In this document: one piece after another, positions 25,604 through 54,104 of the stretch
How the letters are laid out: every line of letters starts with the position of its first letter
Numbering within the stretch: the first letter of the stretch is position 1
Source of the DNA: Gekko japonicus
Lineage: Eukaryota
Reading direction: 5' to 3'
NCBI RefSeq assembly: GCF_001447785.1
Contig: NW_015164758.1
Location: 64,328-128,301, forward strand
DNA: 63,974 nt
The notes under the pieces: model-generated
The model's input: only the letters and a program-made list of their open reading frames with translations
Told to the model about the DNA's origin: nothing
The model's database searches: none
Position numbers and translations under genes: made by a program

Positions 25604-26622
25604 CTAGAAGTGGGTAGAAGGAAAGGATAATAAGACATAAAAGGGGCAGAGAAAATCACCTGCCAAATTAAACATTATGTAGTATTTTATTGTTTGCATG
25701 ATGGCAACAAACGGCACAGGGCTTGGCCCCTTCAATCCTCATGGGCCAAACAATGAAGAAGAGATTGGATTCATACCACATCCTTCACTACCTGAGGGAG
25801 TCTCAGAGTGGCTTACAAACTCCTCTCCCTTCCCCTCCCCACAACAGACACCCTGTGAGGTAGGTGGTCCTGAGAGAGCTCTTTTGGGAACTGCTCCTGA
25901 GAGAACAGCTCTGAAAGAAGTTGTAACTGACCCAAGGTCACACCAGCAGCAGCATGTGGAGGAGATGGGAATCAAACCCGGTTCTCCCAGATTAGAGTCC
26001 ACACTCCTAACCACTACACCAAACTGACTCTTGATCCCATACAGCCAGGTAGGAGCCCACTGGTCAAAAAGAGGGGACAGAGAGAACCATATACTCTATG
26101 TGAATGACACAGCTTGTTGGAGGAAGGAAACTGAACTGTTTTAAAGTCAGTGCCTCCTGCGTTTCTTGTTTTGTGCTAGAAAGAGAATAAAGGCAAGAAG
26201 TTTTCATTTATTTTGATTTATTTTATTTTACTTCATTTATACCCCGCCTTCTCCCCCTCAATGGGAACACAAAGCAGCTTGCATCATTCTCCTCTCCTCC
26301 ATGTTAGCCTCACACCGACTCTATGAAATAGGTTAACCTGAGCGTACGTGACGGGGCCAAGGGCACCCAGTGAGCCCCCATGGCAGAGGGGAGATCTGAA
26401 CCTGGGTCTCCCATATCCTACGTCCTGGACTCCAACCACCACACCAGGCTGGGTCTTGCGTAGACATGCCTCAAAATCCTTTCTGTGCTCATTTTATCTG
26501 AACATTATTTTATCTCATATATTTTGCACTAGCAGTAAAGCCCATTGTAGAAGCAATACAACGAGCTCTGGAAAGATGTGATATGTAAAGAATACAGTGA
26601 CTGGAAGTAGGTGACGTACATA

Positions 26623-27960
26623 CTAATAGCTTCCGGAGCCCCTCCAGGGCTCCACTTACCGGACTCGGCGGTCACTCCGCTCTGTGGCCGGAATCAGGTT
26701 TGAGCAGGGCAAAGAGCTGTGTCCCTGGGCTCCCCTCTCCACTGCCAGCGAGCTTCGCACGTGGTGTACAGTCCCTTCTGCCCGCGTCGCTTTTTGTCTG
26801 GAGCCACTGAGCCAAGACCAATGTGGCTGCAGTGGTGGAGACAACACCTCCCCAGAAGGAAGGCAGGGCAGGGAGGCGCCGGCAAAGGAAGGGGGGGAAG
26901 CCAGGATGGTAGAGGCCGGCCGGCCAGCCAACCAGGGACCTGTGCCACTCATTCGCCAGCCAGCCCCACAAGGGCGAGGCAAGTCACGGTCTCTCGCTCT
27001 CCTTCTCTCACCACGCTGCAACAAACTTTTCTGCCAGACTTTCCTCCACCCTACCGGCAACAGAGCGACCTGGAGGCGAAAGACCAGGCGCGGCCACTGG
27101 CCGAGGAGTAAGAGAGGAGGAGAAGCCGCTGCTGCTGCCACCGCCACTCTGGGCATACAGGTTGTGCATGTTACATACGTGCTGTTGCCAGCCGGAAAAC
27201 AAAGCATCAGGAACAGTGTCCTGGCATGGCCGTTGGGCCCGCACTGGCTTGGAGGGCTGGCTCGCAGGCACGGAAGGCCCTCCGGCATGGGAGAAGGGGC
27301 CTCAGTGGCGGCAACCGGCCACTGCAGTTCTAGCTGTGCGCAGCAAACAAATAGTGAAGAGGAGCATTGTGCCCTGGCCGCTGGGCCCATGCTGCCTCAG
27401 AGGGCTGGGTCCCTGATCCCAAAGGGCCTGCGGCATGGGGGAAGAGCGCAGCAATGCCAGACAGACCCACCATGGCCCCGAAGAACCTGGCTGTGGGCCC
27501 GTCCAGAACCTGCTGGCTTCACAGCGCCCCAGGGGAGTGAGTGTCCTGCACCCTGGGCCGCCAGCTGAAGTTGGGGTGTGTGTGTGAAGATGGGCAGCAG
27601 ATGGACACCGCTGTGCCGAAGGGGAGGCCCGATGCTACCCGCCCCTCTCAGAGCCCTACCAGAGCCCTCAAAAGGCAGGCAGAAACGCTGGCTGCTGGAG
27701 CAGGGCCGTCGTGCTACAAGGCTCCGCGCTAGAAGGATCCCCCCGCTGGGAAAAGGCTCCACAGGCAAATGACATCCTCTCTCTTCTGAGGTGAAGGTGT
27801 GTTCTGAGGCGACTTTTGGTGGGCAGTGCTTCTGTGGGTGGGACTCAGGCAACGCAGCCAGTGAATAGGGACAGCTTCTGATTGGCAGATGAGGGAGCCA
27901 ACTGATTTGGGAGCGCATGGAACGTTGCCACTCGAAAACAGAATTATATATAAGGAGAGA
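26623..27960 (-). mobile_element. Non-autonomous Helitron (1338 bp)
   Basis: 5' TCTCTCCTTATATATAA identical to the 29949 element; perfect hairpin GGAGCCC-5nt-GGGCTCC at 26635-26653; ends TTAG|T (one change from CTAG); GC-rich body with sharp edges. Confidence 0.75.
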
Positions 27961-28026
27961 CTGTACATTTTAGAAAAACCTACCGAACACACACACACAC
28001 ACACACACAGAGGCACACTTTTTTAC

Positions 28027-28278
28027 CTGGTGTTGGAATTGGAAGGTCTATTCTATTGCAGAAATCTTTGTCACAGCAATGAGGCACAGTAGTAACTCCT
28101 TCAGCTGATGATGGAGCACAAATAAATGGCCTGTCTCTGGGAATCAGATCAATTTCTGCTATACACATGCTATTGCGTATAATTTTATCTCCATTTCGTG
28201 TCACTGAAGTAATGCAGAGCCCGTCTGTTGTACACGTAAAGTTCTCTTTTGCACAAACAAGGCAAACACACTGTAAGG
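28027..28278 (-). CDS. TGFBR1: TGF-beta receptor type-1, exon 2 (cysteine-rich ectodomain)
   Basis: ttacag|CC TTA CAG TGT ... CCA G|gtaaaa; 252 nt, phase 1-1; encodes LQCVCLVC...[20 protein letters not shown]...CCDKDFCN. Confidence 0.97.
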
Positions 28279-29726
28279 CTGTAACAAAGAAGAATATTTT
28301 AATATTAGTTGTGTTAATCAAAGTGCTCCTAAAATATGCTTCCACTCCTCTAACTGCTAATCTATACAGCTATAAATTGCATAATAATTATGTATTGTGA
28401 ACTACCAAACAAAAATCTTAAATCATTCCAGGAATAAAGTGGCTAGAGCCTTTGAGGAAAAGACAAGCTTCTAGAAGAAGAAGGAAGATGAGGAGGAGAT
28501 TGGATTTATATCCCGCCCTTCATTACCCGAAGGAGTCTCAGAGCAGCTTACAATCACCTTCCCTTCCTCTCCCCACAACAGAGACCCTGTGAGCTACGCG
28601 GGGCTGAGAGAACTCTCCCGAGAACTGAAGAAGAAGAAGAAGAAGAGATTGGATTTATATCCTGCCCTTCACTTGGAGTCTCAGAGCGGCTTACAAACTC
28701 CTTTCCCTTCCCCTCCCCACAACAGACACCCGCCCTTGAGAGAACAGTTCTGAAAGAACTTATGACTGACCCCAGGGTCATACCCACAGCTCTATGTAGA
28801 TACAGAATCAACTGTCTTTCTACCACAGTTGACCTCCAGCTTTCAAAAAAGACACATTTTCAGATGGTTACAAGCAAATAGAAGGTACTGGTGAAATAAA
28901 CCAACAATGAAAAGCAAGTCTGAATCCTGTCAACGTCCCCTTTAAACCTTGCCCTTACCGCCTCATGTACAGATTCTCTCACAGCTCCTGGTTGCCTCCA
29001 TTCCTTTCTCTCTCCGCTCCAGCCCCCACTTCTCAATCTGTATGGTTCAGAGCATGAATTAGGGGGGGGGTCCTGGGGAGAGACTGCTGCCATCATTTTG
29101 ACCACTTGCTGCACTCCCCTTCCCTCCCTGGTGGATTATTTTACTGCTTACAGCTGTGTTCGCTGTATTTGGCAGTTTGGTTATTGATTTCTCATATTGT
29201 AAACTGCTTTGTCCACATCCAGTGGAGAAAAAAAAGGTTAAAGTATCCAAGCCAGTCAGTCTTTGGCTCAAACTTTACCTTTGCCATGAAATCACCAAAT
29301 TATACTTGGTCGGCCTGTACCTTCCCCACTTTTCCATTTACAATATGTGGGCCTAACTTACTAAGTTCTCGTAATACGCTCTCAGATAGTGCGTGCAGAA
29401 GGATATGAGGACTCTGATAGCCAGGTAAATAGGACAGAGATTCTCTGGCACAGCAGCAGTCATGGTCACAGGCAGTGCACCTTGTACCAGATTTACATTT
29501 AAAGCAGGCATCTCTAAGTCTCCAACCTGTCCATAACCAGGGCCCCGTACTTCCCATGTTTTTAAAAAGACAGGAGGTGGCCGAGGCAAGCACGTGGGAA
29601 GATGCAAAGGTGATGAGCAGAAGTAGGAAAAAAAAGAGTTAAGGGGAACATGGGATTTCTGCAGTTCCTCATAGGTCAACTAAAAGGAGATCACCCAGCA
29701 GTATAGTAGTAACAACAACGGGAAAG

Positions 29727-31097
29727 AGCTGTGAAGCAGGACACAATAGAACTGGTATGAACGTTAATATATTGGACAAACACAATGTGTTCAGTACATG
29801 AATATAATCATTGCACAATAAAGCACAGTAATTCTAAATATGAATCTTCTGATATACAATGAAATTCTCTTTCCAAAATAGTTCTTTCCAACAAAGAATC
29901 CGGATATTGAAGATTTCGTTTCAATAGTTGTCCTCAAGAAAATTACTATCTCTCCTTATATATAAAAGAGTTTTGGTGTCTCTCCTCCACACGCTCCTGC
30001 AGCCTTTGGCTCTCGCACCTGCCACTCTGAAGGATCCCCTGGCTGCATTGGCTGGCTCCCTTGCCTCCATCCCACCCACAAAGGTGGTGAGGCAGCCGCC
30101 AGCATCTCTGGCTCACTGTGCTCTGAGCCAGTCGACGGGATAGATGCTCTGGCGGCCAGAGGGTGAGTAGGCCCACTGGGAGATGCGGAGAAGAGGTGTG
30201 AAAGCCCAGAGACATTCAGAAATGCCACGATCAGGGCGAGGCGGTGGTGGCTGCTGCTGCTGCAGGAGGCTGCCCCTCTGCTGGCAGCCCTGTCGTCGTC
30301 GTCCAGGACAGCTGAAGTGGCTGACGCCGCACCGCGCTGCGCCCCACCATCACCATTGAACACACCGACAGGCCTCCCTGATGCGGGCCCGCCACCACGC
30401 CAAGACCCTCCTCCTGTTCGACCCCGGTGGCGGGAGCCAGGATGCTGGCAGCGGCGGAGCAGCTGTGCTCTACCTGCCGCTGGGCCCGGGGACTGAGGCT
30501 GCTGCCGCCCCTTCTTCTACCAAGGGAGGGGCTGGCAGGCGGCAGCCCAGCTACAGCTCGTTGCATTTGTCTCCACAACGGGCCTTCTTCCTAGTTATAA
30601 ATATTTCAAAGGCATAAGGTTTCAAAAAACTGTATAGCTTCAGATTACTAATGTAGAAGGAACTGCTCTTCCAGGGTATTCAAAGAGGTTTGTAGTAACA
30701 ATCTCTACTGATGGGCCACCAATAACACTTTTTAGAAACTGTTTTAATGCTGAGCTGGTCTAGCCTCTAGAAATACAACTGTTACTACAAACCTTTTTGA
30801 ATACACTGGAAGGGCAGTTCCTTCTACATTAGCAGTCTGAAGCTATACAGTTTTCTGGAACCTTATGCCTTTGAAATATTTATAACAGTAATTTTCTTGA
30901 GGAAGATTATCGAAACGAAGTCTTCACTATCCAGATTCTTTGTTGGAAAGAACTGTTTTGGAAAGAGAATTTCATTGTGTATCACAAGATTCATATTTCG
31001 AATTAGTGTGCAATGATTATATTCATGTACTGCTCACATTGTATTTGTCCAATATATTAACATTGTTACCATTTTTATTGTGTCCTGCTTCACAGCT
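29727..31097. repeat. Long palindromic element (arms ~320 bp, 79-nt spacer), left arm split by a Helitron; probably Penelope-like
   Basis: 29727-29948 plus 30595-30700 is the diverged reverse complement of 30780-31097. Confidence 0.85.
29949..30594 (+). mobile_element. Non-autonomous Helitron (646 bp)
   Basis: A|TCTCTCCTTATATATAAAAGAG ... GCTCGTTG-12nt-CAACGGGC hairpin ... CTAG|T; no TSD; empty site visible in the opposite arm of the host palindrome. Confidence 0.88.
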
Positions 31098-32024
31098 TAT
31101 TCCTCGTAGGTCCTCACTTGCTATATTTTACAGTAAACTAGTTGGCCCCTATGTGAGTGACAAGAGCCAAAAAAACCATACCACCCAGACAAGGTATGTC
31201 TAGCTACGCTGAGGACTCTCCAGGTAAGCAGAAAAATATGATTCTGTAAATCAAACAAACAAACAAAAATCCCACACACACACAGAGCTTGATGGAAGCC
31301 TGGGGATAGGGAACCATGGAGGACATTTTTAGGGGTGGGACTGGATTCCTAAACTGTTCCACTTCCTGCTCCACACTCCCCAGCAATTCCTGGTAGGCTC
31401 CTGCTTGTTTTAATGCCTGCTGCCATTATTAGTTCACTAATTTTTATTTTTATTATGTAAACTGCTTTGAACCTCCTGGAGGAGTAGTGTATGCTGCTAA
31501 ATGAAGAGACAGATTTCACTCAGAAACAAAGCTAGGTATGGTTCAGCCCAGGTGCCTGGGATCACAGAAAAATCCAGCATGCATTTAAAAGACATGGACA
31601 CTTCAACCCAACGAGGCACAAACCCCAGTGGGGACTCTCCCTTCAGCAGCCAGTGGTGGCCACAGACTTCATGTCCAGTTCTTCTTAGATGAGCCAGGAT
31701 AACTTCCTGTCCGTAATTCTTGGGTACTTTTGGTCTAATCATGTCTGAAATTCTGGCTTGAATTCTAGCAGTGGCCTATATGACAGAATACATCTTATAA
31801 CACTGTGCCACTGAAGGGAACAAGAAGCCCTTAGTGGAAGGTGCCACCGGAGTTGTGCTTGCTGAAGAGGAAGCATTTTTTAAGAACACAAGAGAAGCCA
31901 ATGTTGGATCAGGCCAATAGCCCATGCAGTCCAACACTCTGCATCTTATAACACTGAAGGGAACAGGAAGCCCTTAGTGGAAGGTGCCAGCGGAGCTGTG
32001 CTTGCTGAAGAGGAAGCATTTTTT

Positions 32025-50850: not shown

Positions 50851-51920
50851 CTCCACAAAACCTAGAATATCCACCGTCATAACTTTATTAAGATTGTTTT
50901 AGCCACCTGTGCGAGTGGATCGATTCAGGAATTAGCATGCAGAGTTTTGTCCCCCGGCTGCTCAAGATCCATCAGAAAAAGACCTCGACACTCTGGCCGA
51001 ATTCTAAGCGTCACCTTTTCTGTTGCGCACAACCTTGAAAGGGTACTCCCCTAGACTCCACCACTCCTTTCCCTCCAGCCGTAGCCGGAAACCCCACCCC
51101 CAACTGTCGTCCCCCGACGGCCGACTCCTCATCATCACCCAAGAGTCTAAAACGGGGTTTCTTCACTGGCTGCAGGGCTACCGATTCATCCAGTCCGGAA
51201 ACTGTCGCTAAATTTCTTTTTGGTACCATTTCTATTCGCCCTTTATTTAATCGATTGGTATACTGACGGTAATTCCTGACATCTGTTTTTTTGCAACTAT
51301 TATTTTATGCCGTTGTTGTTTTTGTTGTACATGGGTCTGTAAGGGTTGCATGCCAATAAAGGTAATTGGATTGGATTCCTCCAGGCCTGTCAACAGTTCT
51401 TTCTTCAACCAGTAAATCAATGGATTGTAATTCCAAGGATTATTTTGCACCCCGACTGCATTCAAAGCCAGAGGGAGTCTGCTCTCCCTCGAGGAAGAGT
51501 TAACCACAACGGCCGGCCTCTTTCTGGCAGAGACATTGGACCGGTGTGGGCAAGAAGCCAGAAGACTAGTGCAGGACTCGGGAGGATCTTTTCCACATCG
51601 TCTGGCAGCATACACAGAAAGGCATCCAAAACGACAGGGCAAGTGTCTCGTCTAGAACTGGGCTTGCATTTAGTGTGGCATTCAAGCTGGAACGGGTGTG
51701 AGCTAGCGTCTGCAAACCCGTTCCAGCAGACTAGCGCGGGTTCCTCCAACTCATCCCAAAGAGCAAGAGGTATTCATGCCTTTATCGACTCACCGCACAG
51801 ATGCAGTAGTGGTGGTGCCATGTCACCATTACAGTTTGGTGTAGTGGTTAAGAGTGCGGACTCTAATCTGGGAGAACTGGCTTTGATTCCCTACTTCTCC
51901 ACATGCAGCTGCTGGCGTGA

Positions 51921-54104
51921 TCAGGAGATTATCAACAAGTCCCTCTCAGAGGGACGGTTCCCTGGAGCACTCAAGGAGGCGATGGTCCGCCCCCTCTTAA
52001 AAAAGCCATCTTTGGACCCGACTGAATTGGACAACTATCGGCCGGTGTCCAATTTGCCCTATTTGGCCGACGTGGGGATTCAGGGGCTTGCCCTTCAGTG
52101 GTTTGCCTCGTTCCTGCAAGGTCAGGGACAAAGGGTGGCGATAGGGGATCAGCAGTCCCGGAGGCACCCACTCGAGTGTGGACTGCCTCAGGGGGCGGTG
52201 CTGTCCCCGATGTTATTTAACATCTATATGTGCCCCCTTGCCCAGATTGCCCAGAGTTTTGGGCTTGGGTGTCATCAATATGCGGATGAAACCCAGCTCT
52301 ATCTGAGGCTGGGCAGCCGGTCGAACTCCGACCCAGATGATCTTCATCGGGTATTGCAAGCTGTGGGTGGTTGGCTCAGACTGAGTCAGATGAAACTAAA
52401 CCTAGGTCAGGTCGGTTCGGGGTTGGGGCTACCTCTCCCAGCCTTCGATGGGGCGCCTTTGGTGCCGGTGTTGAGGGTTAGAAGTCTGGAAGTGCTTCTG
52501 GACTCCTCTTTATCGATGGAGGCCCAGGTGGCAGCCACTGCCAAATCAGCCTTTTACCATCTTCGGCTGGCGTGGCAGTTGTTTCCTTTCCTTGACCGTG
52601 AGGACTTGGCCACAGTGATCCATGTGACTGTCACCTCGAGGCTGGACTACTGTAACGCTCTCTACATGGGGCTGCCTCTGTCGCAAATTGGGAAGCTGCA
52701 GCTAGTGCAGAATGCAGCAGCCAGNNNNNNNNNNNNNNNNNNNNNNNNNNNNNNNNNNNNNNNNNNNNNNNNNNNNNNNNNNNNNNNNNNNNNNNNNNNN
52801 NNNNNNNNNNNNNNNNNNNNNNNNNNNNNNNNNNNNNNNNNNNNNNNNNNNNNNNNNNNNNNNNNNNNNNNNNNNNNNNNNNNNNNNNNNNNNNNNNNNN
52901 NNNNNNNNNNNNNNNNNNNNNNNNNNNNNNNNNNNNNNNNNNNNNNNNNNNNNNNNNNNNNNNNNNNNNNNNNNNNNNNNNNNNNNNNNNNNNNNNNNNN
53001 NNNGCTGGGCAGCCGGTCGAACTCCGACCCAGATGACCTTCATCGGGTATTGCAAGCTGTGGGTGGTTGGCTCAGACTGAGTCAGATGAAACTAAACCTA
53101 GGTCAGGTCGGTTCGGGGTTGGGGCTCCCTCTCCCAGCCTTCAATGGGGCGCCTTTGGTGCCGGTGTTGAGGGTTAGAAGTCTGGAAGTGCTCCTGGACT
53201 CCTCTTTATCGATGTAGGCCCAGGTGGCAGCCACTGCCAAATCAGCCTTTTACCATCTTCAGCTGGCATGGTAGTAGTTTCCTTTCCTTGACTTGGCCAC
53301 AGTGATCCATGCGACGTTCACATCGAGGCTGGACTACTGTAATGCTCTCTACATGGGGCTGCCTCTGTCGCAAATCGGGAAGCTGCAGCTAGTGCAGAAT
53401 GCAGCAGCCAGGCTGCTGATGGGTCTCACTAGCCGGTGCTGAAGGTGCTGCACTGGCTGCCTATAGCATACCGGATTCGCTTCAAAGTGCTGGTTCTTAC
53501 CTATAAAGCCCTTGACGGCCAGGGTCCAGCGTACCTAAGGGACCACCTTTCTCCATATGTTCCCCGAAGAGCACTACGGTCAAGGGCGCAACACCTATTA
53601 GTTGTTCCAGGCCCCAAGGACATCAAGTTGGCCACAACCAGGGCCAGGGCTTTTTCGGCGGCGGCTCCTGTCTGATGGGACGAGCTCCCAGGGGAGATCC
53701 GGGCCCTGCGGGACCTTGCGCAGTTCCGCAGGGCTTGCAAGACGGAGCTCTTCCGCCAGGCTTTTGCATAGGAGCCACTACCGCCATTGTACCACCACCG
53801 AGCTGCCATCTCTGATGGTGGAGTCGATCTGGATGTGAGCTGGCCCTGGGAAGATGACCAGATGACTTGAAGAACTGGTCACGAAAGGACGACAGTAGTA
53901 TTATCCGGAACTTATACTGACGGGTTAGGCTGGTCAACGGAACCCCATCTTGGACCGATAAGAACCAGTATCAAGAGCACCGGCACGTTGTTGTGATGGA
54001 TTGTTTTATTATGTTTTTAGCTGTTCATCTCTGGCATGTGCCTCTTTTGTTAGCAGCCCTGAGCCCGTTTTGGGGAGGGCGGGATATAAATGTAATAAAT
54101 AAAT
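51921..54104 (+). mobile_element. L2-clade LINE (deleted RT and 3' end), nested in a tRNA SINE; spans an N gap
   Basis: VRPLLKKPSLDP, NYRPVSNLP, GLPQGAVLSP, YADETQLY, SRLDYCNAL, LHWLP; (TAAA)n tail; SINE halves at 51832-51920 and 54110-54302. Confidence 0.92.

What the first reader, a model, noticed from the sequence alone, without database searches (positions are those of the whole stretch)
26623..30594. Two non-autonomous Helitrons with one shared 5' end but unrelated bodies sit head-to-head around TGFBR1 exon 2
Seen: elements at 29949 (+) and 27960 (-) start with the same 17 nt (TCTCTCCTTATATATAA) and share GTTTT at the same offset. After that their GC-rich bodies (646 and 1338 bp) and 3' hairpins show no similarity that I can see. 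Known: 5'-TC, a subterminal hairpin, CTRR-3' and A|T insertion without TSD define Helitrons, which acquire new 3' ends and capture host DNA; in amniotes this is best described in vesper bats. Inference: a squamate Helitron system in which one 5' origin mobilises different captured promoter-like cargos.
Basis: partly seen in the sequence, partly recalled or inferred. Interest (0 to 1): 0.8.

Follow-up and report, generated by a model that had tools for sequence, protein, structure and literature searches.

The report
Two lizard Helitrons sharing both ends
Two non-coding rolling-circle transposons (Helitrons) flank exon 2 of a lizard TGFBR1 gene; they share both end sequences, not just one, and differ only in their interiors, which is the ordinary build of such elements.

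Summary
The 17-nt match is real, and both elements are genuine non-autonomous Helitrons. The central claim, a shared 5' end with unrelated 3' ends, comes from a misplaced boundary.

- **E1 (29949-30594, +):** A paralogous empty site in the other arm of the palindrome it sits in shows a precise insertion with no target-site duplication.
- **E2 (minus strand):** it ends at 26529, not 26623, so it is 1432 bp long. A related species carries the two flanks joined with exactly these 1432 bp missing. Read depth and variable AT-rich flanks mark 26529 and 27960 as family termini.
- **Shared ends:** with the corrected end, the two elements share about 130 bp of 5' sequence (69% identity). They also share the last 40 nt (72%), including the same hairpin 10-11 nt before CTAG.
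- **Copy number:** E2's end modules occur on the order of 1,000 to a few thousand times in this genome. Its 1265-bp GC-rich interior occurs about 1-10 times. In most copies the same end modules join a different, conserved body.
- **Cargo origin:** no coding signal or source gene was found, so "captured promoter" is untested.

Squamate Helitrons and variable interiors are already published. This scan holds 76 other Helitron notes on this genome. This is an ordinary finding, usefully corrected.

The parts
29949..30594 (+). E1: non-autonomous Helitron, 646 bp, A|TC...CTAG|T
   Evidence: Sequence. The paralogous empty site shows a precise insertion with no target-site duplication.
29949..30080 (+). 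E1 5' terminal module, homologous to E2's
   Evidence: blastn gives 132 against 128 nt at 68.7% identity, E=2e-15. Global alignment. First 30 nt are 24/30 identical.
30081..30554 (+). E1 interior (cargo), GC 0.67, CpG observed/expected 0.55, no coding signal
30555..30594 (+). E1 3' terminal module: 8-bp hairpin ending 11 nt before CTAG
   Evidence: Folds. Alignment to E2's true 3' end. Motif search.
26529..27960 (-). E2 with corrected boundary: non-autonomous Helitron, 1432 bp, G|TC...CTAG|T
   Evidence: a contig from related organism C joins 26527 to 27960, skipping 1432 bp with a 3-nt ambiguity. Variable AT-rich flanks begin before 26528 and behind 27960.
27842..27960 (-). E2 5' terminal module, high copy
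   Evidence: depth about 750-1800 against about 1 for single copy. Most other copies continue into a different conserved body before 27842 (agreement 0.91). Contigs from two related species end at 27960 with variable flanks (56 and 82 contigs).
26577..27841 (-). E2 interior (cargo), 1265 bp, GC 0.62, low copy, with an internal ~100-bp duplication 148 bp apart
   Evidence: Depth about 1-10. Internal repeat 27197-27296 against 27345-27444 at 69%. No Pfam match and no protein relatives.
26529..26576 (-). E2 3' terminal module: 11-bp hairpin ending 10 nt before CTAG, high copy
   Evidence: Depth about 1700-2150. Other copies continue into a conserved different body behind 26576 (agreement 0.97). 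Fold, motif.
30877..30896 (-). Paralogous empty site of E1 in the opposite palindrome arm (junction at about 30886/30887)
   Evidence: the empty arm reads ...AAAATTACTG|TTATAAATA..., the filled arm ...AAAATTACTA[E1]TTATAAATA...
29721..31103 (.). Host palindrome that E1 inserted into. Arms are 29721-29947 plus 30595-30700 against 30780-31103.
   Evidence: 334 aligned nt at 88% identity, 79-nt spacer.
28027..28278 (-). TGFBR1 exon 2 (ectodomain). The splice-site boundaries are inferred from the sequence.
   Evidence: Translation; Pfam; PDB. E2's 5' end lies 66 bp beyond the splice donor. E1's 5' end lies about 1.67 kb upstream of the acceptor.

Best explanation
Both elements are non-autonomous members of one abundant lizard lineage of canonical Helitrons (5'-TC, 3'-CTAG). 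Each consists of three parts: a 5' terminal module of about 120-130 bp, a 40-48 bp 3' module carrying the terminator hairpin plus CTAG, and an interior that differs between subfamilies.

Inferred from the published Helraiser mechanism, not shown here: a RepHel transposase encoded elsewhere nicks at the 5' TC, unwinds the strand, and stops at the hairpin/CTAG. It then pastes the strand into AT-rich DNA without a target-site duplication.

E1 and E2 are two independent insertions, into intron 1 (antisense) and intron 2 (sense) of TGFBR1. Their interiors are low-copy, GC-rich, non-coding DNA. This DNA replaced the body of the main family while both ends were kept. That points to internal replacement or recombination rather than 3'-end bypass. 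Their position around exon 2 is most likely a coincidence in a Helitron-rich genome.
For: Termini and hairpins.

Homology of the ends: the 5' ends align at E=2e-15. The 3' ends align at 29/40, z about 8. The motif GCTCGTTG..CAAYGGGC..CTAG occurs only at the two predicted 3' ends, with 0 expected by chance.

E1 insertion: the paralogous empty site shows no target-site duplication.

E2, all:
- An empty site in organism C lacks exactly 26528-27959 (3-nt ambiguity).
- Depth is about 1500-2150 on the end modules against about 1-10 on the interior, with single-copy depth about 1.
- Flanks outside both ends are variable and AT-rich. The base next to the 5' end reads A on the element strand.
- Most other copies continue into conserved but different bodies inside both modules (agreement 0.91 and 0.97).
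- Contigs from two related species carry E2-type interior joined to the 5' module at about 82% identity (for example 27628-27948).

Literature: the 5' terminal sequence is essential, the 3' hairpin acts as terminator, and AT targeting is not absolute, with 46 of 1,751 insertions elsewhere (PMC4778049). Anolis has two autonomous and six non-autonomous Helitron families (PMC3014272).
Against: - No RepHel partner was seen. There is none in the window and the genome could not be searched.
- E1's copy number and family were not measured, because the single reads call went to E2.
- E2's 5' flank is G, and E1's paralogous empty site also has G where the filled site has A. The canonical A|T target is therefore met only on the T side.
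- The last 30 nt are only 67% identical without gaps. Under the 80% convention (PMC2997563) the two would formally be different families.
- The right side of the orthologous empty-site joint is only 23 nt long, limited by the stretch I submitted.
Confidence: 0.85

Rival explanations
1. One reading: the two elements share only the 5' origin. E2 ends at 26623 with its own unrelated hairpin, and each 3' end was newly acquired by read-through (end bypass) together with host DNA.
For: A GC-rich 7-bp hairpin lies 12 nt before 26623. End bypass with new 3' ends is documented for bat Helitrons (PMC4778049).
Against: The sequence at 26623 ends in TTAG, which is not CTRR. The related species lacks the whole 1432 bp down to 26528. 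Family-level flanks start before 26528, not at 26623. The canonical hairpin plus CTAG at 26529-26566 is homologous to E1's.
Confidence: 0.04
2. Two events at the E2 site: an element spanning 27960-26623 lies directly next to a separate, truncated 3' fragment of another Helitron (26529-26622).
For: The bin 26585-26641 has intermediate depth of about 50-100. Head-to-tail junction reads show that copies of this family can lie adjacent (table 5c).
Against: The empty site in organism C removes both parts at once, and the joint sits exactly at the two family termini. A 5' module paired with a matching 3' module is the normal full element, as in E1. The proposed inner end is not CTRR.
Confidence: 0.06
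3. The interiors are captured host promoters or 5' exons, as in bat HelibatN3, so these Helitrons spread promoter activity, here next to TGFBR1 exon 2.
For: GC is 0.62-0.67, and a few 200-bp windows reach CpG observed/expected of 0.6 or more. The interior is low copy, as expected for a recent capture. Promoter capture by Helitrons is known in Myotis (PMC4778049).
Against: Overall CpG observed/expected is 0.48-0.55. There is no Pfam, protein or Rfam signal. The CCAAT and TATA-like motifs lie in the shared 5' terminal module, not in the cargo. No parent locus was identified. The main family's body also appears GC-rich in the two 30-nt read consensuses at its junctions with the end modules.
Confidence: 0.15
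4. These are not transposons. The shared ends reflect a local inverted duplication or chance similarity in GC-rich intronic DNA.
For: The two elements are inverted relative to each other and only 2 kb apart.
Against: The termini are present on the order of 1,000 to a few thousand times genome-wide with variable flanks. Each element has its own empty site. The interiors are unrelated.
Confidence: 0.01

Closest known systems
Non-autonomous Helitron families of Anolis carolinensis (Helitron-1N1_AC, Helitron-2N1 to 2N5_AC; Novick et al. 2010, PMC3014272)
   Same: They are squamate hosts with non-autonomous elements of 0.5-2 kb, hundreds to more than 1,000 copies, no inverted terminal repeats, and AT/TA target sites. 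One family carries captured foreign DNA.
   Different: The Anolis families are described as internal deletion derivatives of their autonomous parents. Here the interiors are unrelated to each other and to the main family's body. Sequence identity to those families could not be tested, because no Repbase or Dfam was available, and the host species is coded.
HelibatN3 and other gene-capturing Helibats of vesper bats; the Helraiser system (PMC4778049)
   Same: 5'-TC, CTAG-3', a hairpin about 10 nt before the end, a 5' terminal sequence required in cis, and empty-site evidence. The interior can be host DNA held between conserved left and right terminal sequences.
   Different: In HelibatN3 the source gene (NUBPL promoter and exon) is identified and the captured unit is amplified to thousands of copies. 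Here no source is known and the interiors are present about 1-10 times.
Maize-type Helitrons, and the 3'-end (family) / 5'-end (subfamily) classification convention (PMC2997563)
   Same: Conserved termini with highly heterogeneous interiors. Classification uses the terminal 30 bp.
   Different: By that rule E1 and E2 have 80% identity at the 5' end and 67% at the 3' end. They would be separate families that are nevertheless clearly homologous at both ends.

Membership tests
Canonical Helitron (Helitron1 type) | 5'-TC terminus | tested here: met
   Both elements start TCTCTCC. Contigs from two related species end at 27960 with variable flanks.
Canonical Helitron (Helitron1 type) | 3'-CTRR terminus | tested here: met
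E1 ends CTAG at 30594. E2 ends CTAG at 26529 after the boundary correction.
Canonical Helitron (Helitron1 type) | Short palindrome/hairpin about 10-12 nt upstream of the 3' end | tested here: met
   An 8-bp stem ends 11 nt before the end in E1. An 11-bp stem ends 10 nt before the end in E2. The stems are homologous.
Canonical Helitron (Helitron1 type) | No terminal inverted repeats | tested here: met
   The ends read TCTCTCC... and ...CTAG. The repeat search reports no inverted pair between the two ends of either element.
Canonical Helitron (Helitron1 type) | Insertion without target-site duplication, shown by an empty site | tested here: met
   E1 has a paralogous empty site. E2 has an orthologous empty site in organism C that skips 1432 bp.
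Canonical Helitron (Helitron1 type) | Insertion between host A and T | tested here: inconclusive
   The 3' T is present in both. The 5' base is A in E1, but G in its empty paralogue, and G in E2. Family-wide flanks are AT-rich, with A next to the TC. AT targeting is known not to be absolute (PMC4778049).
Canonical Helitron (Helitron1 type) | Multiple dispersed copies with the same termini | tested here: met
   This was tested for the termini of E2 only, which have depth about 750-2150 times single copy. E1 was not tested by reads. Runs of two other species labels hold 6-14% of its sampled words.
Canonical Helitron (Helitron1 type) | Autonomous RepHel-encoding partner with matching termini | not testable with these tools
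   There is none in the 64-kb window. The host genome cannot be searched here.
Promoter-capturing Helitron (HelibatN3-like) | Interior traceable to the promoter or first exon of a host gene | tested here: inconclusive
   No Pfam match, no protein relatives and no RNA family. CpG observed/expected is 0.48-0.55. A parent-locus search in the genome was not possible.
Annotated Repbase/Dfam squamate Helitron family | Full-length match to a curated consensus | not testable with these tools
   No Repbase or Dfam library is available. The literature gives family names and sizes only (PMC3014272).

The most novel reading that the evidence does not exclude
The two end modules (about 120 bp at the 5' end and 48 bp at the 3' end) belong to a recently active lizard Helitron lineage. 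This lineage repeatedly exchanges its whole interior for low-copy, GC-rich host DNA while keeping both ends. That would be a capture route distinct from 3'-end bypass. Such elements would land close to exons (E2 is 66 bp from the TGFBR1 exon 2 donor and absent in a related species) and could supply lineage-specific promoters or splice signals.
Probability: 0.15. Interest if true: 0.45.

Novelty: new member of a known kind. Interest (0 to 1): 0.22.

Why it matters
The main value is as a correction. A claim of 5'-end sharing with unrelated 3' ends, which would have suggested active end bypass and promoter shuffling in a reptile, turns into the standard Helitron build once one boundary is moved by 94 bp.

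What remains useful:
- The termini of an abundant lizard Helitron lineage (on the order of 1,000 to a few thousand copies) are defined by empty sites.
- One insertion is absent from a related species, so the family moved after those species split.
- The low-copy interiors are a small, concrete test case for how Helitrons swap interiors while keeping both ends.

There is no evidence that TGFBR1 is affected.

Tried and rejected
- **Interior similarity:** blastn of each element against the other and against the whole window with word sizes 7-9 found no further copies and no similarity between the interiors.
- **Main family in the window:** the two 30-nt body consensus stretches seen in the reads have no match in the window.
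- **Other collections:** a 22-base 5' pattern found nothing in metagenome or viral contigs. These collections are not expected to hold lizard DNA, so the blank means little.
- **Coding signal:** Pfam on five cargo reading frames found nothing. Rfam gave only a chance-level match, E=0.76. The word-based protein search with the 294-aa cargo frame found nothing. It sees only proteins of 0.55-1.75 times the query length, so the blank is weak. I did not run the large representative search, because these frames look non-coding.
- **Earlier notes by sequence:** three look-ups were blank.
- **Alternative junction parses:** shifting E1's junction by one base, so that the element reads A-TCTC...CCTA inserted at T|G, fits its empty site without a substitution. 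E2's joint has a 3-nt ambiguity. I kept the canonical TC...CTAG parse because family-wide flanks end exactly at 27960 and at 26528/26529.
- I left the exon and the (AC)n tract out by choice. No N stretch was touched.
Full report
**What is in the sequence.** The 17-mer TCTCTCCTTATATATAA occurs exactly twice in the 64-kb window, at 29949-29965 (+) and 27944-27960 (-). About 0.13 matches are expected even when three mismatches are allowed. The two copies face each other across a 252-bp exon at about 28027-28278 on the minus strand. Its translation matches Pfam Activin_recp (2.9e-12). It matches solved TGF-beta receptor type-1 ectodomains at 1e-35, against 5e-16 for ACVR1B. The setting around TGFBR1 exon 2 is therefore right. 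GC content rises to 0.60-0.67 in 26700-27900 and 30000-30600, against 0.35-0.48 around them.

**The 5' similarity is longer than reported.** blastn aligns the first 132 nt of E1 with the first 128 nt of E2 at 68.7% identity, E=2e-15 (alignment). The first 30 nt are 24/30 identical. Beyond about 130 nt there is no significant similarity in either orientation.

**E1 is a precise insertion without target-site duplication.** E1 (29949-30594) reads A|TCTCTCC...CCTAG|T. It sits in one arm of a palindrome. The arms are 29721-29947 plus 30595-30700 against 31103-30780, with 334 aligned nt at 88% identity and a 79-nt spacer. The other arm is uninterrupted at the homologous point. It reads ...AAAATTACTG|TTATAAATA..., where the filled arm reads ...AAAATTACTA[646 bp]TTATAAATA.... 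There is no target-site duplication and no inverted terminal repeat. The base 5' of the element is A in the filled arm and G in the empty arm. This is either a substitution, plausible since the arms differ at 12% of sites, or a one-base shift in the junction.

**E2 is mis-delimited.** I laid about 1x of raw whole-genome reads from two individuals of the source species (X8, X11) on 26300-27982 at 80% or higher likeness. I also laid contigs from two related species (X3 = organism B, X5 = organism C) on the same stretch. I left the exon and the (AC)n tract out of this stretch by choice. Four results fix the element at 26529-27960 (1432 bp, minus strand).
- One contig of organism C carries the left flank (26300-26527, about 90% identical) joined directly to 27960 onward. 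It skips 1432 bp with a 3-nt ambiguity (ACT at both edges). This is an orthologous empty site.
- Depth is about 1500-1800 in 27839-27895 and about 1700-2150 in 26528-26584. It is about 1-10 across 26642-27781. Single-copy depth is about 1: 12 and 5 reads were 99% or more alike over the 1683 bp.
- Outside 27960 and before 26528 the unaligned read tails are AT-rich and variable (agreement 0.37-0.42). In organisms B and C, 56 and 82 contigs stop at 27960. The first flanking base corresponds to A next to the TC on the element strand.
- Inside the two end modules most other copies continue into different, conserved sequence. Agreement is 0.97 behind 26576 and 0.91 before 27842.

On the minus strand the element therefore ends ...GCTAG|T at 26529.

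**The 3' ends are homologous too.** The last 40 nt of E1 align with the last 39 nt of the corrected E2 at 29/40. The score is 19, against 8.0 +/- 1.4 (maximum 13) for 500 shuffles. Both fold into the same hairpin (GCTCGTTG.../...CAAYGGGC). The stem is 8 bp ending 11 nt before CTAG in E1, and 11 bp ending 10 nt before CTAG in E2. The motif built from them occurs only at these two places in the window, each in the orientation set by its 5' end. That motif test is partly circular, since the motif was built from these two sequences. The last 30 nt are 20/30 identical without gaps.

**Anatomy and copy number.**
- E2 consists of a 119-bp 5' module (27842-27960), a 1265-bp interior (26577-27841) and a 48-bp 3' module (26529-26576).
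- Its modules occur on the order of 1,000 to a few thousand times in this genome. Most copies are under 90% identical to E2's.
- The interior occurs about 1-3 times over 26642-27496 and about 3-10 times over 27497-27781. Bins of intermediate depth (about 50-130) lie next to each module.
- Contigs from organisms B and C carry E2-type interior joined to the 5' module at about 82% identity (for example 27628-27948). E2-type elements are therefore a small family of their own in at least three species. In organism B they show many internal length differences (tables 5 and 8).
- E1 has the same three-part build (29949-30080, 30081-30554, 30555-30594). Runs of two other species labels hold 6-14% of its sampled words.

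**The interiors.**
- GC is 0.62 (E2) and 0.67 (E1). CpG observed/expected is 0.48 and 0.55, against 0.38 for the window. Only a few 200-bp windows reach 0.6.
- The long reading frames are typical of GC-rich non-coding DNA. They have no Pfam match.
- The 294-aa frame has no relatives in the word-based protein search. This is a weak negative, because the search is limited by length.
- Rfam finds nothing meaningful.
- The CCAAT and TATA-like motifs lie in the shared 5' terminal module, which is family terminal sequence, not cargo.
- "Promoter-like captured cargo" is therefore neither shown nor excluded.

**Mechanism.**
- *Shown here:* 5'-TC, CTAG-3', a subterminal hairpin, no inverted terminal repeats, no target-site duplication, AT-rich variable flanks, high copy number of both end modules, and presence/absence differences between species.
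- *Inferred from published work on Helraiser (PMC4778049):* a RepHel protein made elsewhere nicks at the 5' end, where the left terminal sequence is essential. It unwinds the strand, and the 3' hairpin with CTAG acts as the stop signal.
- *On the target site:* AT targeting is preferred but not absolute. In that study 46 of 1,751 insertions were elsewhere, which accommodates the G|T site of E2.
- *On how the interiors changed:* because both ends are kept, the interiors most likely changed by internal replacement or recombination, not by 3'-end bypass. This step is inference.
- *Autonomous partner:* none is in the window. The only enzyme-like frame is a reverse transcriptase fragment.

**Comparison with what is known.**
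- Helitrons are well documented in a lizard. Anolis carolinensis has two autonomous and six non-autonomous families of 0.55-2 kb, with up to more than 1,000 copies, and one family carries captured repeats (PMC3014272).
- Horizontal transfer of Helitrons involving lizards and snakes is reported (PMC2997563, PMC12001565).
- Conserved ends with variable interiors, and promoter capture, are described in bats (PMC4778049).
- Under the convention that the last 30 bp define the family and the first 30 bp the subfamily at 80% identity (PMC2997563), E1 and E2 score 67% at the 3' end and 80% at the 5' end. They are formally different families that are clearly homologous at both ends.
- I could not compare them with Repbase or Dfam.

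**Earlier notes of this scan.** The scan holds 76 notes mentioning Helitrons in this genome.
- A note that the window holds E1's empty site gave me that lead, and I verified it.
- A note on a shared 48-nt hairpin-plus-CTRR terminus elsewhere in the genome may concern the same 3' module. I did not test that.

**Verdict.** The Helitron identification is supported. The claim of one 5' end with unrelated 3' ends is not. This is an ordinary pair of non-autonomous Helitrons from an abundant lizard lineage, with low-copy interiors of unknown origin.

Noticed in passing
window 26357-26420: A short high-copy repeat fragment, probably a SINE. Depth is about 800-1000 times single copy. Most other copies continue on both sides into the same sequence, which this copy does not share (tables 2 and 7).
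   Followed up: no
window 29721-31103: A large palindrome with 334-bp arms at 88% identity and a 79-nt spacer. It hosts E1 in its left arm. It could be a fold-back element or a local inverted duplication.
   Followed up: partly
window 28484-28574 and 28633-28717: Two adjacent units about 145 bp apart of a SINE-like repeat (GATTGGATTTATATCC...GGAGTCTCAGAGC...), 79-90% identical to each other, in TGFBR1 intron 1.
   Followed up: no
reads of run X11 laid on window 27952-27960 joined to 26524-26531: A few reads (2 for each of three forms) join the Helitron 5' terminus to the 3' terminus with 1-6 letters between them. These could be head-to-tail tandem copies elsewhere in the genome or circular junctions. 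There are too few reads to tell (table 5c).
   Followed up: no
window 27961-28026: E2's 5' end lies only 66 bp beyond the exon 2 splice donor, in the sense orientation of TGFBR1, with an (AC)11.5 microsatellite (27987-28009) between them. The insertion is absent from related organism C, so it is lineage-specific.
   Followed up: partly
window 27197-27296 and 27345-27444: A ~100-bp duplication 148 bp apart (69% identical) inside E2's interior. Contigs of organism B differ from E2 by several internal length changes, including a 288-bp skip that ends in this region.
   Followed up: no
window 51346-52722: An open frame with a reverse transcriptase domain (RVT_1, 9.4e-13), probably a LINE fragment. 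It runs into an N stretch, which I did not touch.
   Followed up: no
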